Assembly (NCBI GenBank): GCA_002269645.1 | Contig: NIVC01000045.1 | Coordinates: forward strand, 372,001 to 436,000 | Direction: 5' to 3' | Length of the DNA: 64,000 bases | From: Macrostomum lignano | Lineage: Eukaryota | Shown: positions 9,833 through 48,351 of the stretch, piece after piece | Layout of the letters: the number at the start of each line of letters is the position of its first letter | How positions within the stretch are numbered: the stretch's first letter is position 1 | Notes under the pieces: generated by a model | Seen by the model: only the letters and a program-made list of their open reading frames with translations | What the model was told of the DNA's origin: nothing | Database searches by the model: none | Position numbers and translations under genes: made by a program

Positions 9833-10261
9833 GGGAGGGGGCACTGGATGTACATTATTTACTGTTAGCTACATCGCTACCAATCCGTCCCTGGACTGTT
9901 GCCTCTCGATTTATGGACTAACTAATATGTAATTAAAATATTGATTAAATTTACACCCCAAAAATGTATTTATTCACTTCCGATCTCTACTCGTTTTTTT
10001 CGCTCAAAATAACCTGAAAAAATGTACAGTATCGTGCGAAATGCGTCGTTTAACTAAATTGTTGTTGATTTTCGCTTTTCTCTTCATCCTACTTGCCAAG
10101 CGAGCAACTTTACCTGAAAAACACGATTTCCAGAGCTATAATCAACAGCCTATCGGCTTTCCCACTAGTCCAAATAAGTCTGACCAAGTAATTCAAACCT
10201 TTTAAGACGTTCGTCCAGAATATTACCTAAAGATGCTAGAAGGCACAGCCGAAGACCTTTA

Positions 10262-10709
10262 CTCAGCAACAGCTAAACCCCCCCCCCAACTCACGCTGTC
10301 ACACGGCCCAAAAGTTTTGTATGCCATCGGTGACTCAGAAATGTGTGAAGGCTGCCGCCGCCAGACGCGAGCGCAAAGTGCGGCATGGGGGATTTGGGGA
10401 GGGGGTGGCGCAACTCAAAGTCTCCAGACATGAACCCCATCGAGCATGTCTGGGACTTTGTAAAGCGAAGAGTTCAGCAGGATGCCCCACAGAATGCTGA
10501 ACAGTTGCGACTGGCGGTCCTGAATGCCTGACAGCAGCTGCCCCAAGAGTTCATCAACCGGCTGGTGATCAGGATGCCACGACGAGTCACGGCACTTTTG
10601 CATGCTCGTGGTTCCTACACACGATACTGAGACTAGAATTAAAGACATTGCTTAACTTTTGTGCCCGTGTGACAGCGTGAGTTGGGGTGGGGGGTTTAGC
10701 TGTTGCTGA
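10262..10709 (+). mobile_element. Internally deleted Tc1/mariner element
   Basis: ~55 bp terminal inverted repeats (CTCAGCAACAGCTAAACC... / ...GGTTTAGCTGTTGCTGAG) flanked by TA. Internal frame 10421-10630 reads SPDMNPIEHVWD...MPRRVTALLHARGSYTRY*. Confidence 0.85.
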
Positions 10710-10725
10710 GTATATATGACCGGCT

Positions 10726-11270
10726 CATCACAGATCTGCTGCAAAAGGCATTCCCGCACAAGCCAACGGAACAGCGTCGCATCATCTGGTTCGGCCCGTA
10801 ATACAGCTATTCGAATGAGCCTCTAGCTGCAACTCACCAGTGGCACCCAGCGGTGGAAGATCTCAGATATTTTCTTGAATTTAACGCCGAGCTTGAAATG
10901 CCAAAGTTTAAAAGCTGCCTGGTAAATTTCTACCAAAATGCCGACGATCGTATTCAATTTCATGCCAATGACGAGCCAGAGCTTGGTACTGACCCGTAAA
11001 TTGCTACGGTGTCGCAAGGGGAAGTGCGCAAGTTTCTGGTGCGGAACAAAGGCGAACGCGAAATTATTGCCATCTTTGACACGACTATTGGTTCAATCAT
11101 CATCATGGCCGGAGCGTGTCGAAGAAAATGTGAGCACAGTGTCCCAGCTGTCGATGTCTAGGAAGGATTCGCTCACCTTCAAGGTGACGCATCTCCCTGA
11201 CGCCAGCACACCGGGGCGCGGAGGCCCCATTCTGACTGCAGCAGCTCGCGACGGTCAAGGGCCTGGCAGT
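10726..11270 (+). pseudogene. Decayed AlkB-like domain from a relative of the AlkB-LINE ORF1
   Basis: QRRIIWFGP*YSYSNEPL...WHPAVEDLR...KSCLVNFYQNADDRIQFHANDEPELG...IATVS...IIIMAGACRRKCEHSVP is colinear with 23106-23645. It has stops and HxD changed to HAN. An ORF1-like VLEGAG...DLDAE segment lies at 9506-9586. Confidence 0.75.
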
Positions 11271-11279
11271 TGTTTGTTG

Positions 11280-11800
11280 GGCTCTGCCGGTCGCCAAAAA
11301 AGATGGCCAGATGAGGAACTTTATATTTTAGCCAGTTTTGAATCAAAGTTTGATCCAATTTTTTTTCCAATTTATGATGCAGCAATTAAAGAAAAAATTC
11401 TTCCAAATAGGACTCTCGATAGTATCAAGGGAGCCAGGCGGACTAAAACTTACAAACTTGTAGAGAAAATTAGAAAAGACAGAATTGATGAAGATGAGAG
11501 TGAGGTAAAAGGCAGAGAAAAAATAAAATTATTGAGAAGAAACTTAGTACTAATTTAACAGAAGAAAGAAAAGAGACTGAAAACCAAATAAAAACGATTA
11601 CAAACTTTGCAGATGAGGTGCTAGCAAGCCTAGACCCAAATATTGCATTTCCGGTAGCTGAGGAGACGGTAAATTCGGCAGCATTTGCTGACGACATGGC
11701 CATCTGCTCGTCCTCTGAAGCTGGCCTAGCTCAGCACCTTAAAATATTTGAAAAAACTCTTAAAGATACTGGACATGAAGTCAATACCGCGAAGAGCGCT
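11280..11800 (+). pseudogene. R2-like retroelement remnant (Myb-like domain and RT FADD segment, internally deleted)
   Basis: WPDEELYILA...LPNRTLDSIKGARRTKTYK, then LDPNIAF...VNSAAFADDMAI...GHEVNTAKS. Confidence 0.7.
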
Positions 11801-12571
11801 ACCCCACGTAACCAAAATCCTCGCTACAATAACGCGGCGATATCGCCCAGCGATTCGCCGAAGCCTCGCCCAATGATCGCCCATTACCGCCAAGCCATCG
11901 CGCATGTCCGCCTGCGCGATATCGCCACGTATCGCCCCGCGATACCGCCGAAGCCTCGCCCAATGATCGCTTGTTACCAGTACACCATCGCGGATTTCCG
12001 CCTGCGCGATATCGCGGGGCATGCAATTAGCGACTTATTTTTTACGTTTCCTTGTGGTACAGTAAAAAAAGTATAAAATAAGTAGAATTTATAATGCAGT
12101 ACACAAAAGTACACAAATTTTTCTTTCCAGTATGCAACTTATTGCAGACAGTCAACGGCAAACTGCCAAAAAATTCGGAAATGTAGAAGTATCTGCTGGC
12201 GGCAGCTTCAGTATATTTTCTTACGAGTTCCAAGGATAATAAATTACAGGCATAAAGCAGGTCCTGCTTTCCTCACTGGTTTGTACTGATTAAAACCACG
12301 GATAGAAGTGCACTTCAATCGAAGAATGGAAATTCCCCTATCAGGATTTTCTTTGTGTTAGCGTTATGCGGTTGCATATTGTGGGAGCAGTCATCGTGCA
12401 CTTGTATGATGAGGGGTTAATTAGTTTTTTTCATCCGTTTTTCTAACGGGGGGTGATTCGATCCAAAGCCCGCGTATATTGGGAATCTAATTATTGTTTA
12501 TAGTCGAATGAAATGTTCTCTAGGGGGGTCAGAGACCAGTTCCATGCTAACGAAGGTGTTCTATTTGACTA

Positions 12572-20475: not shown

Positions 20476-20592
20476 TCGGGTGGGAGAGGGTGGGTTTCAT
20501 ACTACTACAGAAAGTAGTTTGTCTTACGAAAACGAAGGCTTCGATTAGGAAAACGCTAAGAAGCTAGAATAGGAAGGGTGCGATTCAACATT

Positions 20593-20609
20593 CCGTAAAG
20601 ACGGTCTCT
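20593..20609 (+). ncRNA. 5' part of a spliced-leader RNA exon, interrupted by the retroelement array
   Basis: CCGTAAAGACGGTCTCT contains the CCGT...ACGG stem typical of flatworm SL 5' ends and matches the Macrostomum SL as I recall it (not verified by search). Confidence 0.65.
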
Positions 20610-21860
20610 AAGCTTGTCTAAGGGTTGTGCGCAATCCGATTGGCTATGCCAATTTCAAAGGGTCCGCCCCGGAGGGGCTGTGCCTGTTCTAAAAATAAAC
20701 CCTATTCTTTTTTCTAATTTCGGCCCTCGGCCTTGGTTTAGGGGGGGTGGTGCCCGGAGTGAGTTGGTTCTCTGGACTGCAGTGTGGCTAGGACGGGACT
20801 GAGCCCCCCGGTCGTACCCGCCCTGCAGGAAAGAAAATGACCAATTCACAAAGGTGTACGGTAGACCCAGTAGCATGCCAGCCCTGAGGCTGAGCACCCG
20901 GGCTGCAGGTCGGCAAGCTGCCTGCTCTAGGGCTATGGTGCTCCTCCCTTCTGCCAATCTTTTTTTCTGGGCTGGCATCCCAGCGCTGTTTTATCCCTAG
21001 CTTTGTGCCTTTGTGGCTTTTTATTCTTTTAATCTTTTATCTGGCCAATAGAAGCCTTCCAATTCTCGGAGTTATGAGCTCTGCCCTTGCCCGGTCCATC
21101 TTGCCCTGTCCTCGGGTCCATCTCCTGGCTCCTGCTGAAGGTCCCTGCTTGCGTGTCTCTGGCTCTCATCCTGACAGTGGATTGGTGTCCTGGGAAGGAT
21201 GTTCGTCCCGAACCGGGGACAACCGGCTGAGTCCGGAGTCCTCTTGCCCTGGGTGCCTCTTCTCCCGACCCCTTGGCCTGGCCCTCAATAATGAGCTGGA
21301 TAGGCGATGCCCTTGGGTTGGTAGCAATAGAGGTGTTGCCATGTCCGCCTAGAGTCTCCCCCTCGGATACAAGCCTTCCAGACTCACTCCAAAATAGAGC
21401 TGGGTAGTGAAAAGCCTTGAGGCTCGAGCCCTACAGTTGTCCAGTGCTGTTTAGGATCGCTCTTGGTAATTAGCTGCCCAGACTCGCTCCAATAGTTTAA
21501 GCCATTTCCGCAGGTTTAGGAGTAACTCCTCACTCGGACCGCTTTTTTCAGTAGTATTTCAAGCATTTCGCTTTCCAATTTTCTGCGCACTCCTAAAGAC
21601 TCGCTTGCTGGGGGGTGGCCTGGGTGGACTCGGTCCTAGCACCGTCCCTGATTCCACTGTTTGGGTTGGCGGTGTCTTGTACCGTAGGCTTGGGTCAACT
21701 CGCCCTTTCCCTAGCTTTAAGCTGGGTCCAATCCCAATGCATCCATGGGGTATCTCGGGCCCTGGACAGCTAATGCCTTGGCCCCTGGTAGTGCCCCTCT
21801 GCGGCAGAGCCCACCCCGGGCTGATCCGCGGGTAGCTAAGCTTCCCCCCCGTTTAACAAC
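20610..21860 (+). mobile_element. Array unit A: non-coding retroelement unit
   Basis: Starts at the SL motif and ends in the shared 3' hairpin module plus GTTTAACAAC. No recognisable protein domain. Confidence 0.6.
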
Positions 21861-21877
21861 AAAGACGGTCTCTTACT

Positions 21878-22182
21878 AGCTTTTCGCTCTCCAATTTTTC
21901 TGCGCACTCCCGAGGACTCGCTGGCTGGGGGGTGGCCTGGGTGGACTCGGTCCTAGCACCGTCCCTGATTCCACTGTTTCGGTTGGCGGTGTCTTGTACC
22001 ATAGGCTTGAAGTCCCTCGCCCTTTCCCTAGCTATAAGCTGGGTCCAATCCCAAGGTATCCATGGGGTATCTCGGGCCCTGGACAGCTAATGCCTTGGCC
22101 CCTGGTAGTGCCCCTCAGCGGCAGAGCCCACCCCGGGCTGATCCGCGGGCAGCTAAGCTTCCCACCCTCGTTTAACAACAAC
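21878..22182 (+). mobile_element. Array unit B: 5'-truncated copy of unit A
   Basis: Near-duplicate of ~21560-21860, bounded on both sides by AAAGACGGTCTCTTACT. Confidence 0.75.
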
Positions 22183-22222
22183 AAAGACGGTCTCTTACTG
22201 CGAAACCCCAATTTATTGCATG
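22183..22222 (+). ncRNA. Nearly complete SL exon sequence at the 5' end of the full-length LINE
   Basis: AAAGACGGTCTCTTACTGCGAAACCCCAATTTATTGCATG ends in ATG like flatworm SL exons, but is followed by ACC rather than a GT donor. Confidence 0.7.
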
Positions 22223-22379
22223 ACCGTCCGCGCGCGCGCAAAAATCTGCAAAGCAAAGAATTCCAAATTGCAACAAGGCCTGTGACTCTAATTGCCCATT
22301 GTTCTGCCTTCCACTAGTTCTTAACTTTGTGACAAGAGCTAATAGTCTTATTTTATAGTTAATAATAATATTAGCAGAA

Positions 22380-25349
22380 ATGAGCAAGCAGATCCCGCCT
22401 ACTAAAATTACGAAACCTTCCGGTCTTCCTGCGGCCAAGCGTGTCGATAACCGCTCATCGGTTGATAAGATGGAGGCCTTTGGCCGAAACCTGCTAGGCC
22501 TAGGCAAGAAACCAACACGGCCACCTGCTGGTCCCTCTGGCGCTGCAACTGCCTCTGGTGCTCCGAGCGCAGTTAGCAAAGAGCCCAATAGCAACAGGGC
22601 CTCCAGGAGTAGCGCAGACAGCATCCCGCCGGATGCCCCGTATAGTCTAGCAGCCATTAGCTGCCCGGCTGGTATGGACTGCGCACCAGCACCGCCATCG
22701 GACACGCCACCATCTCCTAGGGAAAAGGCTGAGGTAACTACGCCAGCTTCAATGCCAAATCCAGCCGAACTACCTGAGGTGCAATATTCTAATGACAACG
22801 CATCTACAAGACCAAAATCTCCGGTGCTTGCGATCCCAGCAGAGCAGCCAAAATCACCAGACGGCGCCATCTCCATATCGTCGGCAAGTAGCTCTGGCTC
22901 TGCGACTGTGTTGGAAGGGGCTGGCCAAGCCGGCTCCAAAGACCCCAACGCAGCCGCAGCAGCATCTGACTCTGTGTCTGAGGCAGACTCCGCGAACGCC
23001 GGCTGTGTTGATCTGGATGCTGAGGACGCAAGCATACCGTATGAAAATCCAATTGGCTTTCCAATAAGCGCGGACAAATCGGCACTTCAAGTCAAGCTGC
23101 CTAGCCAAGACGTACGGCTGGAGTATTACCCGAATATGCTCCGTAGCGTAGCCGCCGACGTCTATGACCGGTTGATCCAAGACCTCCTGCCTATTGCTAT
23201 ACGTCACCGGCCTCAGGAACAGCGACGAGTGGTGTGGTTCGGGCCGGAGTACTCTTACTCTGGAGTCCCGCTCGGCGCTAACAAAAAATGGCACCCGCTA
23301 GTTGAAGACATGAGAGACTACCTCGAGCTCAACGCGGACATTGGTGCATCAAAATTTAATAGCTGCCTCATAAACTTTTATGAAACGGCTGATGACTGCA
23401 TACCTTTCCACGCCGATAATGAACCCGAACTCGGCAGGGACCCTTTTATCGCTACGGTCTCCTTTGGTGCAGTACGCCAATTCCTAATTAAGAACAACGA
23501 GGACCAACGAATAGTAGCGCAATTCGAGACAAAGCCCGGCTCAGTGATAGTAATGTCCGGTGCATGCCAACGCAAATGTAAGCACAGTGTCCCAGGAGTC
23601 GGCGTCCAGGAGGGTGTACGCATTTCTCTCACCTTTAGGGTGACATATCCACCTGGCGTCGGCACGCCGGGACACGGAGGCCCGACTGCGGCAGCAGCAT
23701 TCGTTGGAGACGGGCCTGGCAGTGGCCGGGCGGGCACCAGCCTGGCTGCGCCGGGCTCCCGGACAGCTGCGACCAACGGGCAGCCAGGAGACTGCGGAGC
23801 AGCCGGCGCGTCTGGCTCTGCGGTCCCAGGCGGCCCACGAGCCCAGGGCAACGGCGGCGGCAGCGCCGGCGGTGCGGGGCGGGGCGGCAACCGTCGCTCC
23901 TATGCGACCATGGCGGCAAATCAGCAAAGACCACGACAACCTAATAGCAGTAATGTGGTGCCAGTGGTTTTCAACACAACAGCTGAAGCCAGCCAATTAG
24001 TATTTCTTAAGTGGCTCGCGGCCAACTTTCAAGGGTCGGCCCGAGCCACACTTACCAAATCATTAGCGCACGAATTTGGCTTCCTGGTTTTTCCGGCCAC
24101 GCCACGGGACCATCAAATTTTCCTGCGTGGGCCCCTGCGCGAGCCCCAGTTTGTCGGGGGTCCGGTTACTAGGAGGCTTCCGAAAGCTAGGCATGACCAA
24201 CAAGCGAGGCGGACTGCACCGCAGCGACCGATGACCCAGGAGATCCACTCTTTTGTCGTGCGCGGAGTGCCGCTCAACGTCAGTGCTGAAGACTTCAAGC
24301 GCCACCTGAAAGACAGTGCGGGCCTAAAAATTATCTCGGCTAGCCGCATTATTGCCAAAAGCAAAAATCAACCCACCTACCTGATGCGAGTCTTTGTCCA
24401 AAACAAGCAGACCGTGGACGCCTGTCTGGCAACAGGCATCATCACAGACTTCATAACGTACCAATGCGAGCCAAGCAGAACGGCGACTCCCGCCCGGGCT
24501 CCACAATGCCAAAAATGCCAGAGGTTCGGGCATCACGCCCAACGATGTAGAGCGGCCAAGCGCTGTCAAATCTGTGCGGCCGAGCATCACTGGCGTGAGT
24601 GCGACAGGCAAGATGCTGTCAAGTGCGCGAACTGCGGCGAGTCACACCGCGCTAATTATAGAAACTGCCAGGTAGCGATCGACAGCCACAGTGCGGCCCA
24701 AAGGCGTGCGGCTGCCTACGCAGCGGGCGCTCGTGAAGCCGCGGCTGGGACAGGCCAGTTGACCGCTCCACCATCAATGGCGGCAGCAGCGACAGCAGCA
24801 GCACCAGTATCGGCAGCGGCAGCAGCGGCGCCCCCCGCCCCCGCATTGAGACCAATATCGGCAGCGGCAGCAGCGGCGCCCCCCGCCCCCGCGCCGAGAC
24901 CAACATCGGCAGCAGTCCCGAGTTCGGCCGACGCTGCAGCACGGGCGCCAGCGGCGACAGGAGGCGACGATGACTCGTCCTGGCTCACCGGCCACGCCCT
25001 CCCTAGCCGGAAGCGCCCTGTGCGCGAATCGACCGACTCGGTATTGCAATCCACCGTGCCAAAAGCGACTCAAAACAATAATCCGCCGCCGAGTGTGAAC
25101 TTTGAACCGCTGATCCCAGGACTGGTGAGTGGGCTACTGCCTTGCCTGGTCCAAGCACTCGTAGAGGTGATTACGACGCTCTGGCCGAGTGCTGCCGAAC
25201 GGCCGCTTCCTACTGATGGCTCTGGTGACTCAGTGCCTGAAGTAGTGAGTAGGGTTCTGGCCCGTACACTCCAAGGAGCGTCGCTAAGTCATCAAAGCTC
25301 TGGTCAGCTATCGGGCGCTTTCCAGCGTCAGGCGGATGGCCGGACCTAG
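22380..25349 (+). CDS. LINE ORF1 (989 aa): disordered N-terminus, AlkB/2OG-Fe(II) dioxygenase, RRM-like region and three Cys/His zinc knuckles
   Basis: AlkB at ~23106-23645 with FNSCLINFY...FHAD (His 23409, Asp 23415), KHSVP (His 23583) and RISLTFR. Knuckles CQKCQRFGHHAQRC, CQICAAEHHWREC, CANCGESHRANYRNC. Confidence 0.92.
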   Translation: MSKQIPPTKITKPSGLPAAKRVDNRSSVDKMEAFGRNLLGLGKKPTRPPAGPSGAATASGAPSAVSKEPNSNRASRSSADSIPPDAPYSLAAISCPAGMDCAPAPPSDTPPSPREKAEVTTPASMPNPAELPEVQYSNDNASTRPKSPVLAIPAEQPKSPDGAISISSASSSGSATVLEGAGQAGSKDPNAAAAASDSVSEADSANAGCVDLDAEDASIPYENPIGFPISADKSALQVKLPSQDVRLEYYPNMLRSVAADVYDRLIQDLLPIAIRHRPQEQRRVVWFGPEYSYSGVPLGANKKWHPLVEDMRDYLELNADIGASKFNSCLINFYETADDCIPFHADNEPELGRDPFIATVSFGAVRQFLIKNNEDQRIVAQFETKPGSVIVMSGACQRKCKHSVPGVGVQEGVRISLTFRVTYPPGVGTPGHGGPTAAAAFVGDGPGSGRAGTSLAAPGSRTAATNGQPGDCGAAGASGSAVPGGPRAQGNGGGSAGGAGRGGNRRSYATMAANQQRPRQPNSSNVVPVVFNTTAEASQLVFLKWLAANFQGSARATLTKSLAHEFGFLVFPATPRDHQIFLRGPLREPQFVGGPVTRRLPKARHDQQARRTAPQRPMTQEIHSFVVRGVPLNVSAEDFKRHLKDSAGLKIISASRIIAKSKNQPTYLMRVFVQNKQTVDACLATGIITDFITYQCEPSRTATPARAPQCQKCQRFGHHAQRCRAAKRCQICAAEHHWRECDRQDAVKCANCGESHRANYRNCQVAIDSHSAAQRRAAAYAAGAREAAAGTGQLTAPPSMAAAATAAAPVSAAAAAAPPAPALRPISAAAAAAPPAPAPRPTSAAVPSSADAAARAPAATGGDDDSSWLTGHALPSRKRPVRESTDSVLQSTVPKATQNNNPPPSVNFEPLIPGLVSGLLPCLVQALVEVITTLWPSAAERPLPTDGSGDSVPEVVSRVLARTLQGASLSHQSSGQLSGAFQRQADGRT

Positions 25350-28235
25350 AAAAGTATAAAATAGAAATTTTCGGTAGTAACGGGCATGATGATAGCTCGA
25401 ACCCCACTGCCTCAGGGCTTAGGATCGCCCACCTAAACTGCAGGGGGATTATACCGAAACTAAAAGAACTCAGGCTCTGGGTCTCAGACCAAAAGTTGGA
25501 TATTGCTCTGTTCTCTGAGACCATCCTGAAAAATACCCAAGTATGCACTTTTCCGGGCTATGCTGCAGTGCGGTTTGATCTTCCAAACACGAAGCGTGGA
25601 CTCCTCCTTGTGCACACCCCTCGGGTAAAGGTAGCTGACGTCCAGCTCTCGTACGACAATGTCAACCATGAGGTCCTCACCTGCACAGTCACACCCGTTG
25701 ACGGTGCATGTCCACCTTTCCAACTCTCCCTGGTTTATCGGTCCCCATCGCCGGATAACCTCGACACAGGTCTTTTGACGAGGCTGTCCTCGGCCAAGCA
25801 CTCGCTCATCATGGGAGACCTAAATGCTAGACACAGCTTTTTGGGGGGCGAAAGTCGCAACAACAGAGCAGGACAGCAGCTCCATGATTGGCTCTGTGGC
25901 GATCCATCCCAACGCCCTACCGTTCTCAACCAACCAGGCCAGTTCACCAGAATAGCCCACCGGCAAGGCGCTGTGTCCCGGAATGTGCTTGACCTTGGGT
26001 TAGCCTCCGGTGACCTCGTCTCATATGTCCAAGACTTCAAGGTGGGCTCTGACCTGGACAGTGACCATCTCCCAATCATACTCACACTAGCGAGTAACTC
26101 CCCAGAGTGGCAAGGGCCGGATAAGGCCCGAAATTTTGCTAAAGCTAACTGGGAAGAGTTCCAAAACTCCCTGATGGAAAAGCTGGCAAACGCGTGGCCT
26201 CCAGACCTTAGTACTAGGCAGCAGATTGATGCGGAGGTCGACTTCATCACAAACGCGATCCAGAAAACCATTGAGGATAATGTCCCGGTCAGAAAAGGCC
26301 GTAGAGCACTCCCCCAAAGGATCATTGCCATGATCAAGGAGAGGAGGAAGCTCCGGCGTCTATACCACAGTACCAGGGAAGACAACTTTAGGCTGCTCGC
26401 GAATAGGAAGGCGAAGGAAATTAAAAGCGCTATCCATTCGTTTGAGCAGGGCCAGTTTACCCAATTGTGCGAGAAAATAGTTGAAAAAAGTCAATGCCGG
26501 AATGTCAAGGACTTCTGGCAAGACACAAAAAAATTGATGGGGCGTAAAAAGGGCACCACTATTCCGTCCTTGAACGATGGCGCCTCCCTCGCACATACTG
26601 ACTCGGACAAGGCGGAAATGTTGGCGAGTGCGCTAGATGCCAAAATGCGTCCGATCCCATCTACTGACGAGGATCTGAAGAAGCGGGTTGAGCAGGTCAT
26701 GAAGCTCCCCCTTTTCAGACCTGTCCCTCCGGGCGCCAAACCGCATATGGGCCACCCCCTGGAGGCTCCGTTCTCTGTTACAGACACCCTCTGGGAGCTG
26801 GACCATCTGAAAGTCGACAGTGCTCCGGGCCAAAGTTCCAAACTGCGTCCTTAAGCATGGCCTAGAGCCCATTGCGGTTACCCGCATTACCAAGCTCTTC
26901 AACGACTGTTATCGTACGGGCATCTTCCCATCGCAGTGGAAAAAAGCGGTGGTGACGATGATCCCTAAACCAGACAAACCGCCTGAGTCCCCGGGTTCCT
27001 ATCGGCCCATCAGCCTGACCTCCTGCCTCGGCAAGGTATTCGAGAAGTTATTGGTGAGGAGGCTGATGAAGCATCTTGAGGACCAAGGTATCCTCGGTGC
27101 GGACCAGTGCGCTTACAGGAAGGTCCACTCGACCTACGATAATCTCGTCCGCCTCGTCCAAGACGTCCAGGTGGGCAAAGCTAAACTCAAAAGGATCTTG
27201 GCCATACTCCTTGACGTACAAGCGGCGTTTGACTCGGTGTGGTATGACTACCTGCGTTTCAGGACTTTTGAAGTCAATACACCGGACGCCCTCGTCAGGA
27301 TCTGCTCCGACTATCTGGCAGACAGGCACATGCAGGTGAAGGTGAACGGGGCGCTCAGCCGGCCGTACGAATTGCAGGCAGGCGTCCCCCAGGGTGGCAT
27401 CTTAAGCCCTTTTCCTTTACCTGCTCTTCATCAGCACCATGCCTAGGCCGCAACAACCAAATCTTAAGCGAAGCCAATTCGCCGACGACATGGCGACATG
27501 GCTTCGGCGGACTCTTTTGCTGGCCTCAAAACGCTCCTGCAACCCTACCTCGACCGTGTGTGGAAATGGTGTCGGGGGCAGGGGATCAAAATCAACGCCA
27601 GCAAAAGCCAGGTTATCGCGTTTAACTATAAGCCAACTCAGCGGCTCGATCTTCGCCCCAAGCTGAAACTTGGTGGCACGAGCCTTGAGTACCAGGAAGA
27701 AGTCCGGTTCCTTGGTATGAACCTGGACTACAGGCTGACCCTCAACTCGCATATTGAAAGGGTAGTCAGCCATGGCAGGGCGCTTGCGCTATCCATCAAC
27801 CGCATTGCTAAACTAACCCGGCTAAGCAGCAATACACTAAAAATGCTATACAGGGCTTATGTTGAGAGTGCGCTGACGTACGGTGCCCCGGTGTTGAATA
27901 TTATAGCACCCAGTAATCTCAATAAGCTCCAAAAAATCTAAAACCTAGCCCTCCGGATCTGCTACGGTGCCCCCAGTTACACCCAGGTAGCCTACTTACA
28001 TGAGTTGGCAGCCATGCCGATGATGGCTGACAGGATCCGCGCCCTTTGCGTAGGCTGGCTCACGAAAGTGAAGGCTGCCGGGCACCATAACTTCCATATA
28101 GAACCGGAACTCCCAAGAGCTGCCCGAAACCGTCCCCCAGTGCTGAACCTGCTTTGGGACAGCCTGAAGAGGAGGCAGGTAAATAGACAAGCAGCTGCTA
28201 ATGCGGCAGCCCGTGCGGCCCGCAACCCGCCCTAG
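25322..28235 (+). pseudogene. LINE ORF2: apurinic endonuclease plus reverse transcriptase, with a few frameshifts and one stop
   Basis: LRIAHLNCRG, DIALFSET, IMGDLNARH, SDHLPI (APE); YRPISLTSCLGKVFE, LLDVQAAFDSVW, GVPQGGILSP, FADD (RT). It opens in the -1 frame relative to ORF1 with no nearby in-frame ATG. No RNase H recognised. Confidence 0.9.
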
Positions 28236-28865
28236 ACTTACTAGGTCGGCTACCCCACAGAACCTGGTGCGCCCCCAGACAGCGGCTAGCCCTTCTTTCC
28301 CATCCCATGGACCTGCAGGCTGTCAGTGCATGAATGAATAATTAGACCAAATTACTAAATAGGCGATGAATATTTAGCGGCGAGTGCTGGATCAGGCGGG
28401 GGTGCCTACGACCCAGTAACTAGGCAGTATAAGTAGCGATGCCGAACCGATGTACTGTGATCCGCCACCTACTTTTTCCGTATTCCGCCTTGCTTATATA
28501 ATTTTTCTTACAACCCAACTTTTATTTGCAATGCTGTTTTTACACCTGGCTTTTGCCCTGTTTTTATTTCAAATATTCGCGCTGATCCCCCTAAATAGGT
28601 CAAATTTATCTTTGTGAGGACCTGGCCCAAGCTAAATAGAGCACCCCACTATTAATCAGTTGCGACAAATACTTTTTTATTTATCCCAAAATGTAAATAG
28701 TTCAATATTAAGCGAATCTTTTATTAAATTTATTTTATTCTCTTTCGCTATACCAATATTCGCATTACCTTTTTTAATCAACATATTACATCGGCAGAGC
28801 CCTACCCGGGCTGATCCGAGAGTCCTACTTTGACTCGCTCGTTTAAAAAAAAAAGACGGTCTCTT

Positions 28866-29208
28866 CTAACTAACTAAATTATTTTATCACCTGGCTATAC
28901 TTGCAGTAGTCATTTTCAATTAATGCCAATACTACTCTAAATCTTAATTCAAGAATGCTTGCACTACCCCTTACAGTATGGTCCAGAGCTTTGTGAGGAC
29001 CCCCCCCCTCTATTCAGAAACTCCCCCTATTTTAGTGCAAATTAATCTTAATGAAGCCAAATGTAAATATTTTAAATACCAACTTGAAATTCTATTTTTA
29101 ATGCTTCGCCAACTAAATTCGTATATAAAATTAAAATAAATCGGCAGAGCCCATCTCGGGCTGATCCGAGGGTGCCTAACTTACACCCATTCGTTTAACA
29201 ACAACAAC
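28866..29208 (+). mobile_element. Array unit D: 3'-UTR-only insertion
   Basis: AT-rich ~340 bp ending in the shared hairpin module plus (AAC)4, bounded by AAAGACGGTCTCTT on both sides. Confidence 0.75.
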
Positions 29209-29222
29209 AAAGACGGTCTCTT

Positions 29223-32200
29223 CCGCGGAGCGGCCGGCGCGCCCGGCTCTGCAGTCCCTGGCGGCCCACGAGCCCAGGGCAACGGCGGCGGCAACGTCGG
29301 CGGTGCGGGGCGGGGCGGCTATCGCCGTTCCTACGCTGAAATGGCGGCGAATAACAACCAGGATGCATCACGGCCCCCGAACAATAACCGGGGAAGTAAT
29401 GTGGTACCAGTAGTGTTTAATACTGCGGCAGAAGCTAGTCAAATTGAGTTTCTAAAGTGGCTCGCGGCCAACTTCCAAGGGTCGGCCCGGGCTACACTCA
29501 CCAAAAAGTTGACTTATGAAGTCGGCTTCCTCGTGTTTCCGGCTACTCCGCGAGACCACCAGTTGTTCCTGCGTGGGCCTCTGCGCGAGACCCAGTTTGC
29601 TGGGGGGCCGGTAACGAGGCGTCTACCAAAGGCTCGACCGGACCCACGAGCTAGGCCTGCTGCGCCACAGCGACCCCGATGACCCGAGCGATCCACTCGT
29701 TCGTGGTGCGCGGCGTGCCTCAGGAGGTCGAGGCCAGCGACTTCAAGCGGCACCTGCAAGAGAGCGCGGGTCTTAATATTATATCAGCTAGCCGCATCAC
29801 TGCTAGGCGAGACAACAAGCCTACTAGCCTAATCAGAGTCTTTGTCCGTAACAAACAGACCGTTGATGCCTGTCTAGCCACAGGAATCGTTACGGATTTC
29901 ACAACCTACCAGTGCGAGCCAAACAGGACCGCAGCACCGGCACGAGCACCGCAGTGTCAAAACTGCCAGCGCTTCGGTCACCACGCCCAGAGGTGCAAGG
30001 CGGCCAAGCGTTGTCGGATCTGTGCGGCCGCGCACCACTGGCGAGACTGCGACAACCAAAATGCGGTAAAATGTGCGAACTGCAACGAGCCGCACAGAGC
30101 TAACTACCGCAACTGCCAGGTGGCGGTCGATTGCCACAGCGCGGCCCAAAGGCGTGTGGCTGCCTACGCAGCGGGCGCCCAGGAAGCCGCGGCTGAGATA
30201 GGCCGGTCGACCGCTCCACCACCTATTGCGGCAGTAGCGGCAGCAGTAGCACCAGCATCAGTAGCGGCAGTAGCGGCGTCCCCCGCCCCCGCATCGAGAC
30301 CAGCACCGGCAGCAGTCCCGAGTTCGGCCGACGCCGCAGCACGGGCGCCAACGGCGACAGGAGGCGATGATGACTCGTCCTGGCTCACCGGCCATGTCCT
30401 CCCAAGCCGGAAGCGCCCTGTGCGCGAATCGACCAACTCGGAATCGCAATCTACTGTGCCAAAAGTAACTCAAAATAACAATCCGCCGCCGAGTGTAAAT
30501 TTTGAACCGCTGATCCCAGGACTGGTGAGTGGGCTACTGCCTTGCCTGGTTCAAGCACTCGTAGAGGTGGTCAAGACGCTCTGGCCGAGTGCTGCCGAAC
30601 GCCAAAATGCGCCCGATCCCATCAACTGATGAAGATCTGAAGAAACGGGTTGAGCAGGCTATGAAGCTCCCCCTCTTTAGACCTGTCCCCCCGGGCGCAG
30701 AACCATACATGGGCCACCCCCTGGAGGCTCCTTTCTCTGTCACGGACACCCTCTTGGAGCTGGACCACCTAAAAGTAGACACTGCTCCGGGCCTGGACAA
30801 AGTTCGTAACTGCGTCCTTAAGCATGGCCTAGAGCCCATTGCGGTTACCCGCATTACCAAGCTCTTCAACGACTGTTATCGTACGGGCATCTTCCCATCG
30901 CAGTGGAAAAAAGCGGTGGTGACGATGATCCCTAAACCAGACAAACCGCCTGAGTCCCCGGGTTCCTATCGGCCCATCAGCCTGACCTCCTGCCTCGGCA
31001 AGGTGTTCGAGAAGTTATTGGTGAGGAGGCAGATGAAACATCTTGAGGACCAAGGTATCCTCGGTGCGGACCAGTGCGCCTACAGGAAGGTCCATTCGAC
31101 TTACGACAATCTTGTCCGCCTCGTTCAAGACGTCCAGGTGGGCAAAGCCAAACTAAAAAGATTGCTGGCCATTCTCCTTGACGTACAAGCGGCGTTTGAC
31201 TCGGTGTGGTACGACTACCTGAGGTTCAGGATGTACGAAGTCAACTCACCGGACGCCCTCGTCAGGATCTGCTCTGACTATCTAGCAGACAGGCTAATGC
31301 AGGTGAAGGTTAACGGAGCACTTAGTCAGCCGTACGAGTTGCAGGCGGGTGTCCCACAGGCCTGCAACAGGATGGAGTCGTCAGGATGGAGTCCCATCCC
31401 GAGCCCTTTCCTTTACCTGCTCTTCATCAGCACCATGCCTCGGCCAGGACAACCAAACCTTAAGCGAAGCCAATTCGCCGACGACATGGCCATCTGGGCC
31501 TCGGCGGACTCTTTTGCTGGCCTCAAGACACTCTTGCAACCTTCCTAGATCGCGTGTGGAAATGGTGTGGGGGGCAGGGGATCAAGATCAACGCCGGCAA
31601 GAGTCAGGTCATCGCGTTTAACTACAAGCTTACCCAGCGGCTCGACCTCCGCCCCAAGCTGAAACTTGGTGGCACGAGCTTTGAATACCAAGATGAAGTC
31701 CGGTTCCTTGGTATGAACCTGGACTACAGGCTGACTCTTAACTCGCATGTTGAAAGAGTAGTCAGTCATGGCCGGGCACTTGCGCTTTCCATCAACCGCA
31801 TTGCTAAACTGACCCGACTAAGCAGTAACACCCTAAAAATGCTCTACAGGGCTTATGTTGAGAGTGCGCTGACCTACGGTGCCCCGGTGCTGAATATTAT
31901 TGCACCCAGTAACCTCAATAAGCTCCAAAAAATCCAAAACCTAGCTCTCAGGATCTGCTATGGTGCCCCCAGTTACACCCAGGTAGCCTACTTACATGAG
32001 CTGGCAGCCATGCCTATGATGGCGGATAGGATTCGCGCCCTAGGCGTGGGCTGGCTCACCAAAGTGAAGGCTGCTGGGCACCATGACTTCCACATAGAAC
32101 CGGAACTCCCTAGAGCTGCCCGAAACCGCCCCCAGTGCTGAACCTGCTATGGGACAGCCTGAAGAGAAGGCAAGCAAATAGACAAGCAGCTGCGTATGCG

Positions 32201-33003
32201 GCGGCCCGTGCGGCCCAGAACCCGCCGTAGATCTGCTAGTTCAGCTGTTCCAATATATGGGTGCGCCCCCAAACAGTGGCTTGCCCCTCTTTCTCCTCTG
32301 TGAGGATCAATCCTCTGTCAGCGCACAATCAAACAAACCAAAATATTCAATAGGCGTAGAATAATGCGGCGAGTGCTGGACCAGGTGGGGGTGCCTACGA
32401 CCCAGTAACTATACAGTAAGAATTGCTGTGCCTACCTGTTAGTACTGCTGATGATACTGTGATCCGCCGCAGACCTCTTCCTGACTCCGCCTCTCTTTGC
32501 CTTTTTACAATCGAATTATTTTAAACTGCAAATGCTTCTTTTACACCTGGCTTTTGCCTTGCTTATATTTTTACTCTTCTTTTTATCCTAACCCAAATAT
32601 ACAAATAATGCTTCTTACATAAACTTTTAGTTATATGTGCCAACGAGGCCAATCCAATATATTTCGTGTAGGGGCTGCTACTAGTAGTAGTTCCTGCCGC
32701 ATAGCTATTATATTATTTTTTACTAAATACAAATATTTGAATACTGATTTAAAACCTTCGCGCTGATTCCCCTTTCGGTCCAAAATATCTTTGTGAGGAC
32801 CCGTCCCAATTTCTGTAGAGTTCCCCCTCTATCAGTTGCGACCACTTCTTTATTTTTATTCCTAAATGTAAATAATTAATTTAAATCGAATATTTTAACT
32901 CTCGTATAACCAATACTTAGCAAACTTTTTTTTAATTTAAATATATCGGCAGAGCCCTACCCGGGCTGAACCGAGGTGTCTTCAGCACCACTCGTTTAAC
33001 AAC
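29223..33003 (+). mobile_element. Array unit E: 5'-truncated, internally deleted LINE (ORF1 C-terminal half joined to RT; APE missing)
   Basis: Starts just downstream of AlkB. The junction at 30600/30601 joins unit-C-equivalent 25200 to ~26639. RT, 3' UTR and (AAC) tail are present. Confidence 0.88.
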
Positions 33004-33013
33004 AAAGACGGTC

Positions 33014-36000
33014 CTGCTGTGTTGGAAGGAGCTGGCCAAGCCGGCTCCGAAGACCCCAACGCAGCCGCAGCAGCATCTGAATCTGATTCTGCCTCCGTGG
33101 CGGATTCTGCGCGCGACGTCAACGTTGACCTAGATGCCGAGGACATTAGCTTACCTTACGAGAACCTAATCGCTTTTCCAAGAGGCGCAGACAAGTCCGG
33201 CATGATATCTAAGTTGTCCAGCCAAGACTTCCGCCTGGTCTACTATCCTAATATGCTACGCAGTGTTGCCATCGATGTTTATGACAGGCTAGTTCAAGAC
33301 CTTCTTCCAATTGCTGTGAGACATCGGCCCCAGGAACAGCGTCGAGTTGTGTGGTATTGCCCGGAGTATTCTTATTCCGGTGTCCCGCTTGGCGCTAACC
33401 TGAAGTGGCACCCATTAGTAAAGGTTATGCGAGATTATCTAGAGCTCAATGCAGACATAAACGCACCTAAATTCAATAGCTGCCTCATTAATTTCTACGA
33501 ATCGGCAGATGATTGTATACCATATCATGCCGATAACGAGCCAGAGCTTGGCCAAGACCCCTTCATTGCTACGGTCTCCTTCGGAGCCGTGCGCCAATTC
33601 TTGGTAAAAAATAACGAGGATCAGCGTGTAATTGCCCAATTTGAGACCAACCCCGGCTCGGTGATCGTAATGTCGGGAGCCTGTCAGCGAAGATGTAAGC
33701 ACAGTGTCCCAGGAGTCGGCGTCCAGGAGGGTGTACGCATCTCACTCACCTTTAGGGTGACCCATCCACCTGGCGTCGGCACACCGGGGCACGGAGGCGC
33801 GACAGCGGCAGCAGCACCCGTCGGGGATGGGCCTGGCAGAGGCGGGGCGGCTCCAGTCCTGCTACGTCGGGCCCCCGGACGAGCGTGGCGACCGGGCAAC
33901 CAGGCAGCAGTGGGGCGGCCGGCGCGCCCGGCCCTGCTGCGCTTGGCAGTTCCCGCAACCAAGTCCAAGACCGTAGCAGCAATGTTGGTGCGGGGCGCGG
34001 TGGCGCAGCTCAACGGCCTAACGTCCAAGGGCGCTCATATGCGTCAGCTGCGGGTCAGAATATTAATAATCAAATTAGGAATAATAATAATAATGCTGCA
34101 CCAGGCCGGCAGAATGTAGTGCCGGTCGTCTTTACCTTCGACGGCGACACCGGCGACAGCAGCTTCAGCCAAATTAGCTTCCTCAAATGGTTGGCGTCAA
34201 ACTTCCAGGGCAACGCCCGAGCTACGCTGATCATCAGATCTTCCTCCGAGGGCCGCTGAGGGAGCCGCACATAAATGGTGTACCAGTTAACCGTAGACTG
34301 CCTAATGCCAGAACAACGTATAACAGACCCGCTGACCGGCAACCTCCAGTCCAATCGGTGCACTCGGTAGTAGTCCGGGGAGTGCCGGTCGAGATTGAGA
34401 TGCCGGCGTTCATTCAGCACCTGCGGGAGGACGTGGGCTTGAAGATCATCTCCGCGAGCCGCATCACGTCACGAGCGCGCAACTAGCCGACTCACCTCGT
34501 CCGCCTATTTCTACCAAATAAAGCCACTGCGGATGCTTGCCTGGCGACAGGCATCGTATCGCAGTTCACGAGGTATGCCTGCGAACAAAGCAAGACGGCT
34601 GCTCCGGCTAGGGCGCTCCAGTGCCATAAGTGCCAGCGTTTCGGCCACAGCGCGAATCTGTGTCGTGCTGCTCCGCGCTGCAACATCTGTGCGGCGGCGC
34701 ACCGCTGGCAGAAGTGCCCGAACCCGGACGCGGCCAAATGTGCGAACTGTGGCGAGGCCCATCGAGCCAATCACAGGAACTGCCCTGTAGCTGCTTAGAA
34801 ACACAGCCAGGCGGCCCGGCGCGCTGCAGCCTACCAAGCCGGCGCCCGGGAAGCCATGGCAGCAGGGCAAGCAGCAGCTTTGCCACCAGTATCAGCAGCA
34901 GCAGTGATTGAGCGAGCTGCACCAATAGCAGCGCAGGCGACGGCAGCAGCAGCAGCGCCACCCGCCCCCGCACCAAGACCAGCTTCGGCGACTGCGCCTA
35001 GACCAACTGAGACCGCTGCACGGGCGCCAACGGCTACGGGGGTCACCGACGATGACTCGACCTGGCTTACAGGCCGTGGCCTCCCTAGTCGAAAGCGCCC
35101 TGTGCGCGACTCGGTTGACTCTGCGACCCAGACGCAGCCGCCAAGTGACCAGCCGCCTAGTATGCTCGCTGCCATGGAAGCTACGGTAAGTGGGCTCTTC
35201 CCCAAGCTGGTACAAGCACTCGTAGAGGTGCTTACGATCCTCTCACCGAGCCTAGTCGAACGGCCGCCTGCTACTGAAGGTACCGGTCAAACGGTGCCAG
35301 ATGTAGTAGGTAGGGTTCTGACCTGGGTCCTCGCGGGGGGATCGGAAAGTCACCAAGGCTCTGGTCAGCTGCTTGGCGCCCCCCTGGCGGCAGGCGGATA
35401 ACCAGACCTAGAATATAAAGTGAATAATAATCTTCGGTGATAATGAGCAAGATAGTTCCAACCCCACTGTCTTAGGGCTTAGGATCGCCCACCTAAACTG
35501 CAGGGGGATTATACCGAAGCTAAAAGAACTTAGGCTCTGGGTCTCAGAAAACAGCGCCACATCTAACTTTTGGTCTGAGACCATTCTGAAAAATACCCAA
35601 GTATGTAAATTTCCGGGCTATGCTGCAGTGCGGTTTGACCTTCCGAATACGAAGCGCGGACTCCTCCTTGTTCACTCCCCACGGGTTAAGGTAGCTGACG
35701 TCCAAGCTCTCGTATGACAACATCAACCATGAAGTTCTTACCTGCACGGTCACGCCTCTTGACGGAGCTTGCCCTGCATTTCATCTGGCCTTGATTTATC
35801 GGTCCCCATCGCCGGACAACCTTGATGTCGGTCTGATGACTCGGCTGTCTTCGGTCAAGTACTCTCTTATAATGGGTGACCTCAACGCCAGGCTCAGCTT
35901 TTTGGGGGGCGAGAGTCGCAACAACAGGGCTGGTCAACAGCTTCACGATTGGCTCTGCGGCGACCCCATCCATCGTCCCACCGTCCTTAACCAACCAGGT

Positions 36001-36436
36001 CAGTTCACCAGGATTGCCCACAAGAATGGTACGGTCTCTCGGAATGTGCTGGACCTTGGTCTGGCCTCCGGTGACCTAGTCCCCTTTATCCAGGACTTCA
36101 AAGTGGGTGACGACCTAAATAGCGACCACCTTCCAATTGTTCTCACTCTGGCGAACAACTCCCAGATTGGCAAGGGCCGGAGAAGGCTCGCAACTTTGCC
36201 AAAGCCAACTGGGAGGAGTTCCAGAACTCGCTAATGGAAAAACTGATTGACGCGTGGCCTCCCGACCTCAACACTAGGCAGCAAATTGACGCGGAGGTCG
36301 ACATTATTACAGGCGCCATCCAGGAAACTGTTGAGCAAAATTTCCCGGTCAGAAAAGGCCGTAGAGCCCTCCCCCAGAGGATCATTGCTATGATCAAGGA
36401 GAGGAGGAGGCTCCGGCGACTGTACCACAGTACCAG
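33014..36436 (+). mobile_element. Array unit F: 5'-truncated sister LINE with AlkB, zinc knuckles and APE, cut off by Gypsy sequence
   Basis: AlkB at ~33220-33760 with HAD at 33526-33534, KHSVP and RISLTFR intact. Knuckles at ~34620-34790; APE at ~35480-36200. Homology to unit C stops at 36436. Confidence 0.88.
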
Positions 36437-48350: not shown

Positions 48351-48351
48351 A

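What the first reader, a model, noticed from the sequence alone, without database searches (positions are those of the whole stretch)
22183..22285. Full-length LINE begins with a complete SL exon that is not followed by a splice donor
Seen: only the full-length unit carries the whole exon to ...TTGCATG, followed by ACC instead of GT. The SL ATG opens a 21-codon uORF (22220-22285) out of frame with ORF1. Inference: the element RNA may be SL trans-spliced, or template-switched onto SL RNA, with the leader reverse transcribed. That would give a cap and 5' homology to the target, and would regenerate a target for the next insertion.
Basis: partly seen in the sequence, partly recalled or inferred. 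Interest (0 to 1): 0.72.

Follow-up and report, generated by a model that had tools for sequence, protein, structure and literature searches.

The report
Spliced-leader-gene LINE with built-in leader
A flatworm jumping gene inserts repeatedly at one spot in the spliced-leader RNA gene, and its only full-length copy starts with the rest of that leader, cut exactly where splicing cuts it, which points to a leader that travels on the element's own RNA.

Summary
Window 22185-22222 is the Macrostomum spliced-leader (SL) exon from AGACGG to ...TTGCATG, with 3 clustered mismatches. ACCGTCC follows it, not the donor GTAAG. The 21-codon uORF is real.

The context changes the reading. Window 20.5-36.4 kb is one SL RNA gene, with a promoter motif and the exon start at 20523-20609. 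Six retroelement units have inserted into it at the same exon position (GCCGTAA^AGACGG). They are an APE-type LINE with an AlkB domain in ORF1 and a non-autonomous partner. The five non-full-length units keep only 8-15 nt of exon. The full-length copy keeps 38 nt, ending exactly at the splice donor.

A sister LINE in M. lignano (RT about 68% identical) behaves the same way in U5 snRNA genes. All six full-length copies start with U5 from the insertion site to the snRNA 3' end, and a truncated copy keeps 12 nt. In one array this leader differs from the native U5 flank, so it is not a local duplication.

Best reading: the leader is carried on the element's RNA. It supplies 5' homology and rebuilds the target and promoter context. 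The SL/LINE joint was made by splicing at some point. Fresh trans-splicing in every cycle is unproven. Template switching onto SL RNA is unlikely.

The parts
20523..20541 (+). snRNA-type proximal promoter motif (CTTACGAAAACGAAGGCTTC) of the SL RNA gene that hosts the array
   Evidence: ACGAAAACGAAGG occurs once in the window, 67 nt before the exon remnant. Nearly the same motif lies 72-74 nt before three M. lignano U5 genes.
20593..20609 (+). Left boundary of the array: SL exon nt 2-18 (CCGTAAAGACGGTCTCT), including the part upstream of the insertion site
   Evidence: It matches the 45-nt SL of M. cliftonense and the SL gene in L003.
20610..21862 (+). Unit A: non-autonomous element that shares only the ~65-nt 3' module with the LINE
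21863..21877 (+). SL exon piece, 15 nt (AGACGGTCTCTTACT)
21878..22184 (+). Unit B: 5'-truncated copy of unit A (93% identity)
22185..22222 (+). SL leader of the full-length LINE: exon from the insertion site to the splice donor (38 nt, GACTC->ACCCC variant)
22220..22285 (+). uORF of 21 codons opened by the SL ATG, out of frame with ORF1
22223..28853 (+). Full-length APE-type LINE: 5' UTR, ORF1, ORF2 remnants, 3' UTR and tail
22380..25349 (+). ORF1, 989 aa, intact. It has an AlkB-type 2OG-Fe(II) oxygenase domain (aa 279-420) and CCHC-like knuckles near the C-terminus.
   Evidence: Pfam PF13532, E=2e-22; translation
25355..28235 (+). ORF2 (APE endonuclease + reverse transcriptase), broken into at least 4 pieces by frameshifts and stops
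   Evidence: Pfam PF14529 and PF00078
28792..28853 (+). Conserved 3' module: CGGCAGAGCCC..CCGGGCTGATCCG hairpin, then CTCGTTTAA plus an A/CAA run
   Evidence: Alignment A2. The M. lignano sister element has the same module.
28854..28865 (+). SL exon piece, 12 nt
28866..29210 (+). Short unit consisting only of a LINE 3' UTR and tail
29211..29222 (+). SL exon piece, 12 nt
29223..33005 (+). LINE copy 2, 5'-truncated. It starts at position 1612 of the full-length copy and carries an internal deletion.
33006..33013 (+). SL exon piece, 8 nt (AGACGGTC)
33014..36436 (+). LINE copy 3, 5'-truncated (starts near position 724). A Gypsy-type LTR element fragment cuts it at 36437.

Best explanation
The region is a spliced-leader RNA gene that an SL-exon-specific LINE lineage and its non-autonomous partner have hit repeatedly. 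The LINE has an APE endonuclease, a reverse transcriptase and an ORF1 carrying an AlkB domain. The endonuclease nicks the bottom strand at GCCGTAA^AGACGG and the top strand about 12 nt downstream. Incomplete cDNAs are therefore joined after only 8-15 nt of duplicated exon. A full-length RNA of this lineage carries the target gene's own RNA sequence at its 5' end as a leader. Here that leader is the SL exon up to the splice donor. When reverse transcription reaches the 5' end, the cDNA end is complementary to the SL exon and anneals to the short top-strand overhang of the target. The 5' junction then forms by homology, and a complete SL exon is rebuilt in front of the element. If the target is an intact SL gene, the rebuilt arrangement is promoter, complete leader, then LINE. 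That arrangement can be transcribed from the SL promoter into the same leader-bearing RNA. The rebuilt exon also contains the insertion site again, so arrays grow. The leader stops exactly at the donor (GCATG|), which is best explained by the spliceosome once joining the SL donor to an acceptor at the element's 5' UTR. That could have been trans-splicing, or cis-splicing of an SL-gene co-transcript. The spliced form was then inherited. Shown: the site specificity, the leader-length rule, the exact donor boundary, and the element-borne leader in the sister family. Inferred: homology-directed 5' joining, transcription from the SL promoter, and the splicing origin of the joint.
For: 1. Site specificity. 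Six 3' junctions are identical (tail|AGACGG), all units share one orientation, and the left boundary keeps exon nt 2-18 behind a promoter motif. 2. Leader rule. The five other units keep 11, 15, 12, 12 and 8 nt of exon, while the full-length copy keeps 38 nt. 3. Donor boundary. The 38 nt end exactly where the SL ends in trans-spliced mRNAs L001 and L002, and where the SL gene L003 continues with GTAAG. There is no SL intron similarity after the joint or anywhere else in the window. 4. Sister family in M. lignano. Its APE is 56% and its RT 68% identical at the amino-acid level, and it has the same 3' module. It sits in U5 snRNA genes at TACTAA^AGATTTCC (Rfam U5, 83.8 bits). All six full-length copies begin with U5 from the insertion site to the snRNA 3' end and share one constant U5/LINE joint. 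The one truncated copy keeps 12 nt. 5. In array L016 the native U5 3' half at the right boundary is a different variant from the leader, about 65% identical after nt 14. The leader therefore travels with the element and is not a local duplication. 6. The three mismatches in the window's leader lie beyond nt 15, in the part predicted to come from the RNA. 7. By hand: pooling both species, 7 of 7 full-length copies have the long leader and 0 of 6 other units do. That split arises by chance in 1 of 1716 arrangements.
Against: Only one SL-type full-length copy could be examined, so its true 5' end, and whether the SL leader is inherited in this family, rest on analogy with the U5-specific sister. 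The copy is not next to the promoter now, because units A and B lie between them. No transcript data are available. The U5 leader ends at an RNA 3' end rather than a splice site. The two families may therefore have acquired their leaders by different routes, which is less economical than a single mechanism. The three clustered mismatches could also be later mutations in an old copy, since ORF2 carries frameshifts. The right end of the array is missing (cut at 36437), so the native SL sequence of this gene cannot be compared with the leader.
Confidence: 0.6

Rival explanations
1. Fresh trans-splicing in every cycle. Source copies would carry an outron and an AG acceptor just before ACCGTCC. Their pre-mRNA would receive the SL by ordinary trans-splicing, and the spliced RNA would be reverse transcribed. 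SL-bearing copies would then be dead-end products.
For: The joint lies exactly at the SL donor and looks like the trans-spliced mRNAs L001 and L002. About 20-30% of Macrostomum genes are trans-spliced (PMC8629364 and PMC10468722). Calvelo et al. 2025 proposed the same origin for partial SLs next to LTR and LINE elements in parasitic flatworms (PMC12582326).
Against: No copy with an outron or AG acceptor was seen. The leader differs from the otherwise invariant SL at 3 clustered positions. The sister family builds the same architecture from U5, which is never trans-spliced, with a constant inherited joint in 6 of 6 copies. This idea alone does not explain why the element also targets the SL gene.
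Confidence: 0.2
2. Plain target duplication or target rearrangement. For this one insertion the top strand would have been cut, or the 5' end joined, 38 nt downstream, or in a neighbouring SL gene copy. The coincidence with the exon end would then be chance.
For: Long duplications are known for some site-specific elements, for example the 126-bp duplication of rotifer R9 and the 49-bp one I recall for SLACS. Both come from my own knowledge and were not checked here. The sample size in the window is 1.
Against: Five other junctions cluster at 8-15 nt. The 38-nt piece ends exactly at the donor, roughly a 1 in 40-60 coincidence. In the sister family the long leader is not a copy of the local target.
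Confidence: 0.1
3. Chimeric retrocopy by template switching. After copying the LINE RNA, the reverse transcriptase would jump onto another RNA. That RNA would be SL RNA, a free SL exon, or the 5' end of a trans-spliced host mRNA. In the last case part of 22223-22379 would be host 5' UTR rather than LINE.
For: Template switching onto small nuclear RNAs is well known, for example U6-L1 chimeras. It was proposed for the snRNA-derived heads of SINEU (PMC4494074). The stretch 22223-22905 is present only once in the window, so the LINE's own 5' end is not independently defined.
Against: Switching onto SL RNA would copy the intron half first, and that half is absent. The free exon is a transient spliceosomal intermediate. 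In the sister family the joint is constant across 6 copies, so whatever made it happened once and was then inherited.
Confidence: 0.07

Closest known systems
CRE-clade elements of trypanosomatids (SLACS, CZAR, CRE1, CRE2) and NeSL-1 of nematodes
   Same: They insert at one fixed position inside the spliced-leader exon of SL RNA genes, in one orientation (PMC12278014; PMC4640811). From my own knowledge, SLACS is transcribed from the SL gene promoter.
   Different: Those elements use a restriction-enzyme-like endonuclease placed after the RT. This element has an APE-type endonuclease before the RT, two ORFs and an AlkB domain. Its full-length copy carries the exon only up to the splice donor.
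Tx1-clade APE LINEs that target small RNA genes (Keno in U2 snRNA genes; Tx1 families listed for U5 snRNA and 5S rRNA)
   Same: They have an APE endonuclease plus RT. They target pol II/III small RNA genes precisely with short duplications, form tandem insertions and switch targets often (PMC4494074; PMC4640811). The M. lignano sister family targets U5 snRNA genes.
   Different: Clade membership was not tested. In the papers I could read, no SL-gene target, no AlkB ORF1 and no target-derived leader ending at the RNA's natural boundary are described for that clade.
R2 elements co-transcribed with 28S rRNA
   Same: From my own knowledge (work of the Eickbush laboratory): the element has no promoter of its own and is transcribed with its target gene. 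In many species the processed RNA keeps upstream 28S nucleotides, so the cDNA end can anneal to the target for 5' joining.
   Different: R2 uses a self-cleaving ribozyme and an RLE endonuclease. Here the leader is the part of the target downstream of the insertion site, and the joint looks spliceosomal.
Partial SL sequences next to LTR/LINE elements in parasitic flatworms (Calvelo et al. 2025)
   Same: SL sequence fused to retroelements in flatworm genomes, interpreted as integration of trans-spliced retrotransposon RNA (PMC12582326).
   Different: That study reports this as a by-product of SL gene filtering. It describes no site specificity for the SL gene, no arrays and no rule separating full-length from truncated copies.
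snRNA-headed SINEs (SINEU) and U6-L1 chimeric retrocopies
   Same: A retroelement whose 5' part is a piece of a spliceosomal small RNA, acquired through RNA and then inherited (PMC4494074).
   Different: Those heads are not the element's own insertion target and do not rebuild a promoter context.

Membership tests
SL-exon-specific non-LTR retrotransposons (CRE clade / NeSL-1) | Insertion at one fixed site of the SL exon, in a constant orientation | tested here: met
   Six identical 3' junctions (tail|AGACGG) and a left boundary with exon nt 2-18
SL-exon-specific non-LTR retrotransposons (CRE clade / NeSL-1) | Restriction-enzyme-like endonuclease C-terminal to the RT, with no APE domain | tested here: not met
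   Pfam Exo_endo_phos_2 (APE type) lies upstream of RVT_1, with the N-terminal APE motif LRIAHLNCRG
Tx1- or R1-clade APE-type target-specific LINEs | APE endonuclease plus RT in ORF2 | tested here: met
Tx1- or R1-clade APE-type target-specific LINEs | Precise insertion into a multicopy RNA gene with a short target duplication | tested here: met
   Duplications of 8-15 nt, most often 12 nt, in the window. The U5-specific sister has 12-14 nt.
Tx1- or R1-clade APE-type target-specific LINEs | Placement of the RT inside the clade by phylogeny | not tested
   No reference LINE set was available. PDB comparisons were uninformative.
Tx1- or R1-clade APE-type target-specific LINEs | ORF1 with nucleic-acid-binding CCHC knuckles | tested here: inconclusive
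   Three CCHC-like motifs are visible in the translation (CQKCQRFGHHAQRC, CQICAAEHHWREC, CANCGESHRANYRNC). Pfam reported only the AlkB domain at E<=0.01.
Retrocopy of an SL-spliced RNA | The SL ends exactly at the donor and is followed by non-intron sequence | tested here: met
Retrocopy of an SL-spliced RNA | The leader is identical to the functional SL | tested here: not met
   Three mismatches (GACTC->ACCCC) against an SL that is identical in three Macrostomum species and three metagenome contigs
Retrocopy of an SL-spliced RNA | A source locus with an outron and an AG acceptor, and SL-bearing transcripts | not testable with these tools
   There is only one full-length copy in the window. No genome or transcriptome of the source species could be reached.
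Elements with a target-derived 5' leader (co-transcript strategy, as in R2 and SLACS) | Full-length copies carry target sequence well beyond the duplication seen in truncated copies | tested here: met
   Window: 38 nt against 8-15 nt. M. lignano: about 66 nt in 6 of 6 full-length copies against 12 nt in the truncated copy.
Elements with a target-derived 5' leader (co-transcript strategy, as in R2 and SLACS) | The leader is brought by the element and not copied from the local target | tested here: inconclusive
   Met in sister array L016, where leader variant A differs from flank variant B. It cannot be tested in the window because the right end of the array is missing.
Elements with a target-derived 5' leader (co-transcript strategy, as in R2 and SLACS) | Transcription starts at the target gene's promoter | not testable with these tools
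   A promoter motif is present at the array's left end, but there are no transcript data.

The most novel reading that the evidence does not exclude
A Macrostomum LINE lineage homes into pol II small-RNA genes: the SL RNA gene in this species and U5 snRNA genes in M. lignano. It carries the downstream part of that gene's RNA as its own 5' leader. Every full-length insertion therefore rebuilds promoter plus complete leader in front of itself, which amounts to promoter capture by homology. In the SL-specific branch the leader was fixed by splicing. The retrotransposon RNA would then be indistinguishable at its 5' end from a trans-spliced host mRNA, and it might share that mRNA's cap and translation route.
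Probability: 0.4. Interest if true: 0.8.

Novelty: new variant of a known kind. Interest (0 to 1): 0.62.

Why it matters
How LINEs without an internal promoter obtain a defined, capped 5' end and a precise 5' junction is an old question. Known answers are ribozymes (R2), internal promoters (L1, jockey) and co-transcription (SLACS). Here two sister families point to another answer. The element keeps a piece of its target's RNA as a leader, and that leader both guides 5' joining and restores a promoter-plus-leader context. The SL-specific branch also links retrotransposition to spliced-leader splicing. The target switch between U5 and SL genes, at RT identity of about 68%, offers a natural pair for studying how an APE endonuclease changes its target. 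It also matters in practice: SL-like sequences next to LINEs can be mistaken for SL genes or for trans-spliced genes during annotation.

Tried and rejected
- SL pseudogene with a mutated donor: rejected. The sequence after GCATG has no similarity to the SL intron (27-28% of shuffles score as well), and the intron half is nowhere in the window.
- Other SL exons in the window: none. Two weak TTGCATG matches are chance.
- Rfam: no family hit in the window or on the SL gene L003.
- More SL-type copies: the protein word searches and exact look-ups found nothing close. Two viral-contig scans were empty.
- The single metagenome scan returned one SL gene and two trans-spliced mRNAs, which served as references, but no LINE.
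- Comparing the array's left flank with the L003 promoter gave nothing significant. The promoter motif appeared only when compared with M. lignano U5 genes.
- More distant Logan relatives (33-38% ORF1 identity; L004, L007-L015) showed no SL or snRNA sequence next to them.
- PDB searches did not help assign a LINE clade.
- A 7-bp stem (GACGGUC with G|ACCGUC) closes the SL in the fused RNA, but the fold as a whole is no better than shuffles (z = +0.6). I do not build on it.

Full report
**Observation.** Window 22185-22222 reads AGACGGTCTCTTACTGCGAAACCCCAATTTATTGCATG and is followed by ACCGTCCGCGCGC.
- The spliced leader (SL) of Macrostomum lignano is CGGTCTCTTACTGCGAAGACTCAATTTATTGCATG (PMC8629364).
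- The longer leaders assembled from RNA reads of M. cliftonense and M. hystrix start GCCGTAAAGACGG (PMC10468722 supplement).
- The window sequence is therefore the SL exon from its nt 8-9 to its last base, with three clustered mismatches (GACTC->ACCCC).
- It is the only such sequence in the 64 kb, with none expected by chance.
- A scan of metagenome contigs gave useful yardsticks. L003 is a real SL RNA gene in which the exon continues GCATG|GTAAGACACC and folds into three hairpins. L001 and L002 are trans-spliced mRNAs in which GCATG is followed by unrelated sequence.
- In alignment A1 the window copy looks like the mRNAs, not like the gene.
- The sequence after the joint shows no similarity to the SL intron, and the intron half is nowhere in the window.
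- The uORF (22220-22285, MTVRARAKICKAKNSKLQQGL*) is real and out of frame with ORF1 at 22380.

The SL piece is one of six.
- AGACGGTCTC.. occurs at 20599, 21863, 22185, 28854, 29211 and 33006. At every site except the first it directly follows the same retroelement tail, a conserved hairpin CGGCAGAGCCC..CCGGGCTGATCCG and then CTCGTTTAA(CAA)n.
- At the left end (20593-20609) the exon also keeps the bases upstream of this site (CCGTAA|AGACGGTCTCT).
- Sixty-seven nt further upstream lies ACGAAAACGAAGG. This motif occurs once in the window. Almost the same motif stands 72-74 nt before three U5 snRNA genes of M. lignano.
- So 20.5-36.4 kb is one SL RNA gene with its snRNA-type promoter, and six units in the same orientation have inserted at one exon position (GCCGTAA^AGACGG).
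- The units, in order:
  - unit A (20610-21862), a non-autonomous element, and its truncated copy B (21878-22184). They share only the 65-nt 3' module with the LINE;
  - the full-length LINE (22223-28853);
  - a 345-bp 3' fragment (28866-29210);
  - two 5'-truncated LINE copies (29223-33005 and 33014-36436).
- A Gypsy-type element fragment cuts the last copy. The right end of the array is therefore not in the window.
- The LINE has an intact 989-aa ORF1 with an AlkB-type 2OG-Fe(II) oxygenase domain, and an ORF2 with APE endonuclease and RT that is broken by frameshifts.

**The key contrast.** The five units that are not full-length LINEs keep 11, 15, 12, 12 and 8 nt of exon at their 5' junctions, the size of an ordinary target duplication. 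The full-length copy keeps 38 nt, and these end exactly at the splice donor. If the top strand were cut 38 nt downstream and truncated copies simply lost part of the duplication, their lengths should scatter between 0 and 38. They do not; they cluster at about 12. The extra 23 or more nt of the full-length copy therefore most likely came with its RNA template.

**Comparative test.** No close relative of ORF1 was found by word-based searches or exact look-ups. An exhaustive HMMER search did find M. lignano proteins and Logan contigs, and their loci could be fetched.
- Three M. lignano loci (L005, L006, L016) hold arrays of a sister LINE. ORF1 is about 46-50% identical, APE 56% and RT 68%, and the 3' module is the same.
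- These arrays sit in U5 snRNA genes (Rfam RF00020, full-length hits of 83.8 and 83.5 bits).
- The insertion site is CGCCTTTTACTAA^AGATTTCCGTGG, the same TAA^AGA step as in the SL exon.
- All six full-length copies start with U5 from the insertion site to the end of the snRNA. The LINE 5' UTR follows at one constant joint.
- The one 5'-truncated copy keeps 12 nt.
- Array L016 also shows its right boundary. After the last tail comes AGATTTCCGTGGAG and then a U5 3' half of a different variant, only about 65% identical to the leader, with its own Sm-like site and terminal hairpin.
- The leader of the full-length copies is therefore not a duplication of the local target. It travels with the element.
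- Pooling both species, 7 of 7 full-length copies have the long leader and 0 of 6 other units do. By my own count that split arises in 1 of 1716 arrangements.

**Mechanism.**
- What is shown:
  - the lineage targets one site in pol II small-RNA genes;
  - the ordinary duplication is about 12 nt;
  - full-length copies carry the rest of the target RNA as a leader;
  - in the sister family this leader is element-borne and inherited;
  - in the window the leader stops exactly at the SL donor.
- What I infer:
  - The full-length RNA starts with the leader.
  - The end of the cDNA is then complementary to the target, anneals to the short top-strand overhang and primes second-strand synthesis. This gives a precise 5' junction and a rebuilt exon.
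  - In an intact gene the result is promoter, complete leader, then LINE, which can be transcribed into the same RNA again.
  - The rebuilt leader contains the insertion site, which explains the arrays. For example, unit B and then unit A may have inserted into the leader of the full-length copy. The opposite order of events is equally compatible with the data.
- The three mismatches of the window's leader lie beyond nt 15, in the part predicted to come from the RNA. This fits a leader that is inherited and drifts, although later mutation of an old copy is also possible.
- An exon cut exactly at its donor is the signature of the spliceosome. I therefore infer that the SL/LINE joint arose by trans-splicing, or by cis-splicing of an SL-gene co-transcript onto an acceptor in the 5' UTR, and that the spliced form then became the heritable one. 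Losing the donor would also stop the leader from being spliced away from the element.
- In the U5 family the leader ends at the snRNA 3' end, which removes the downstream 3'-end signal. How that joint arose (template switch or selection among junctions) is open.

The leader is RNA-borne, gives homology and regenerates a target. Fresh trans-splicing in every cycle is not shown and is not required. Template switching onto SL RNA is unlikely because the intron half is absent. The proposed refutation, a long duplication from an SL pseudogene lacking GT, is not supported.

**What is known.**
- SL-exon-specific LINEs exist (the CRE clade and NeSL-1), but they use a restriction-like endonuclease, so this element is not a member.
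- APE-type Tx1-clade LINEs target U2, U5 and 5S genes. Membership of that clade was not tested.
- Calvelo et al. 2025 noted partial SLs next to LTR and LINE elements in parasitic flatworms and suggested integration of trans-spliced retrotransposon RNA.
- In the searched library I found none of the following: an APE-type SL-gene-specific LINE, the rule separating full-length from truncated copies with a leader ending at the RNA's natural boundary, or an AlkB domain in a LINE ORF1.
- I rate the finding a new variant of a known kind.

**Limits.** There is one SL-type full-length copy, no transcript data, no access to the rest of the source genome, and the source species is not identified beyond Macrostomum-like. 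The composite explanation gets 0.6. The site-specific array itself is close to certain, an RNA-borne leader is about 0.8, and a spliceosomal origin of the joint is about 0.6.

Noticed in passing
window 23214-23639 (ORF1 aa 279-420); also window 10143-11288 and 63040-63636; L004-L016: The LINE's ORF1 carries an AlkB-type 2OG-Fe(II) oxygenase domain (Pfam PF13532, E=2e-22). Related AlkB-bearing ORF1s occur in M. lignano and in Logan contigs. Two database proteins, P0002 and P0003, look from their sequences as if they pair an AlkB domain with an esterase-like tail; this was not checked with a domain search. The paper search found AlkB only in orchid Gypsy elements and in no LINE.
   Followed up: partly
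L005 9666-21146; L006 9058-21533; L016 1123-12200 (M. lignano GCA_002269645.1): Arrays of a U5 snRNA gene-specific sister LINE. Full-length copies carry the U5 3' half as a leader. In L016 the leader is a different U5 variant from the native 3' half at the right boundary.
   Followed up: yes
window 20610-21862 and 21878-22184: A non-coding element (units A and B, 93% alike) shares only the ~65-nt 3' hairpin and tail module with the LINE and inserts at the same SL site. It is probably a non-autonomous partner mobilised through 3'-end recognition.
   Followed up: partly
window 20526-20538; L005 9592-9606; L006 8982-8996; L016 1047-1061: A shared upstream motif (TTAYGAAAACGAAKG-like) lies about 67-74 nt before an SL RNA gene and three U5 snRNA genes. 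It is likely the Macrostomum proximal sequence element of pol II snRNA-type promoters.
   Followed up: partly
window 22186-22228: In the fused RNA, GACGGUC near the SL 5' end pairs with G|ACCGUC across the SL/LINE joint (7 bp). This closes the leader much as stem I does in native SL RNA. The fold as a whole is not better than shuffles.
   Followed up: partly
window 36437-39597: A fragment of a Gypsy-type LTR retrotransposon (RT, RNase H and integrase ORFs) interrupts LINE copy 3. No LTR pair was found nearby.
   Followed up: partly
window 10143-12076: A degraded copy of another AlkB-ORF1 LINE family: 60% aa identity to ORF1 in the AlkB region, followed by an RT fragment.
   Followed up: no
window 48297-49291: A tandem repeat array with a period of about 23 nt, roughly 1 kb long.
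   Followed up: no
L016 about 12260-12330: Downstream of the native U5 3' half lies a degenerate older tail followed by a U5-like remnant (..CCTCATTTTAACAATAA|TTTCCATGGTGAG..). This suggests older rounds of insertion at the same locus.
   Followed up: no
L005 1-9100: About 9 kb of assorted micro- and minisatellite arrays (periods 9, 16, 19, 21 and 26 nt) lie upstream of the M. lignano U5 gene.
   Followed up: no
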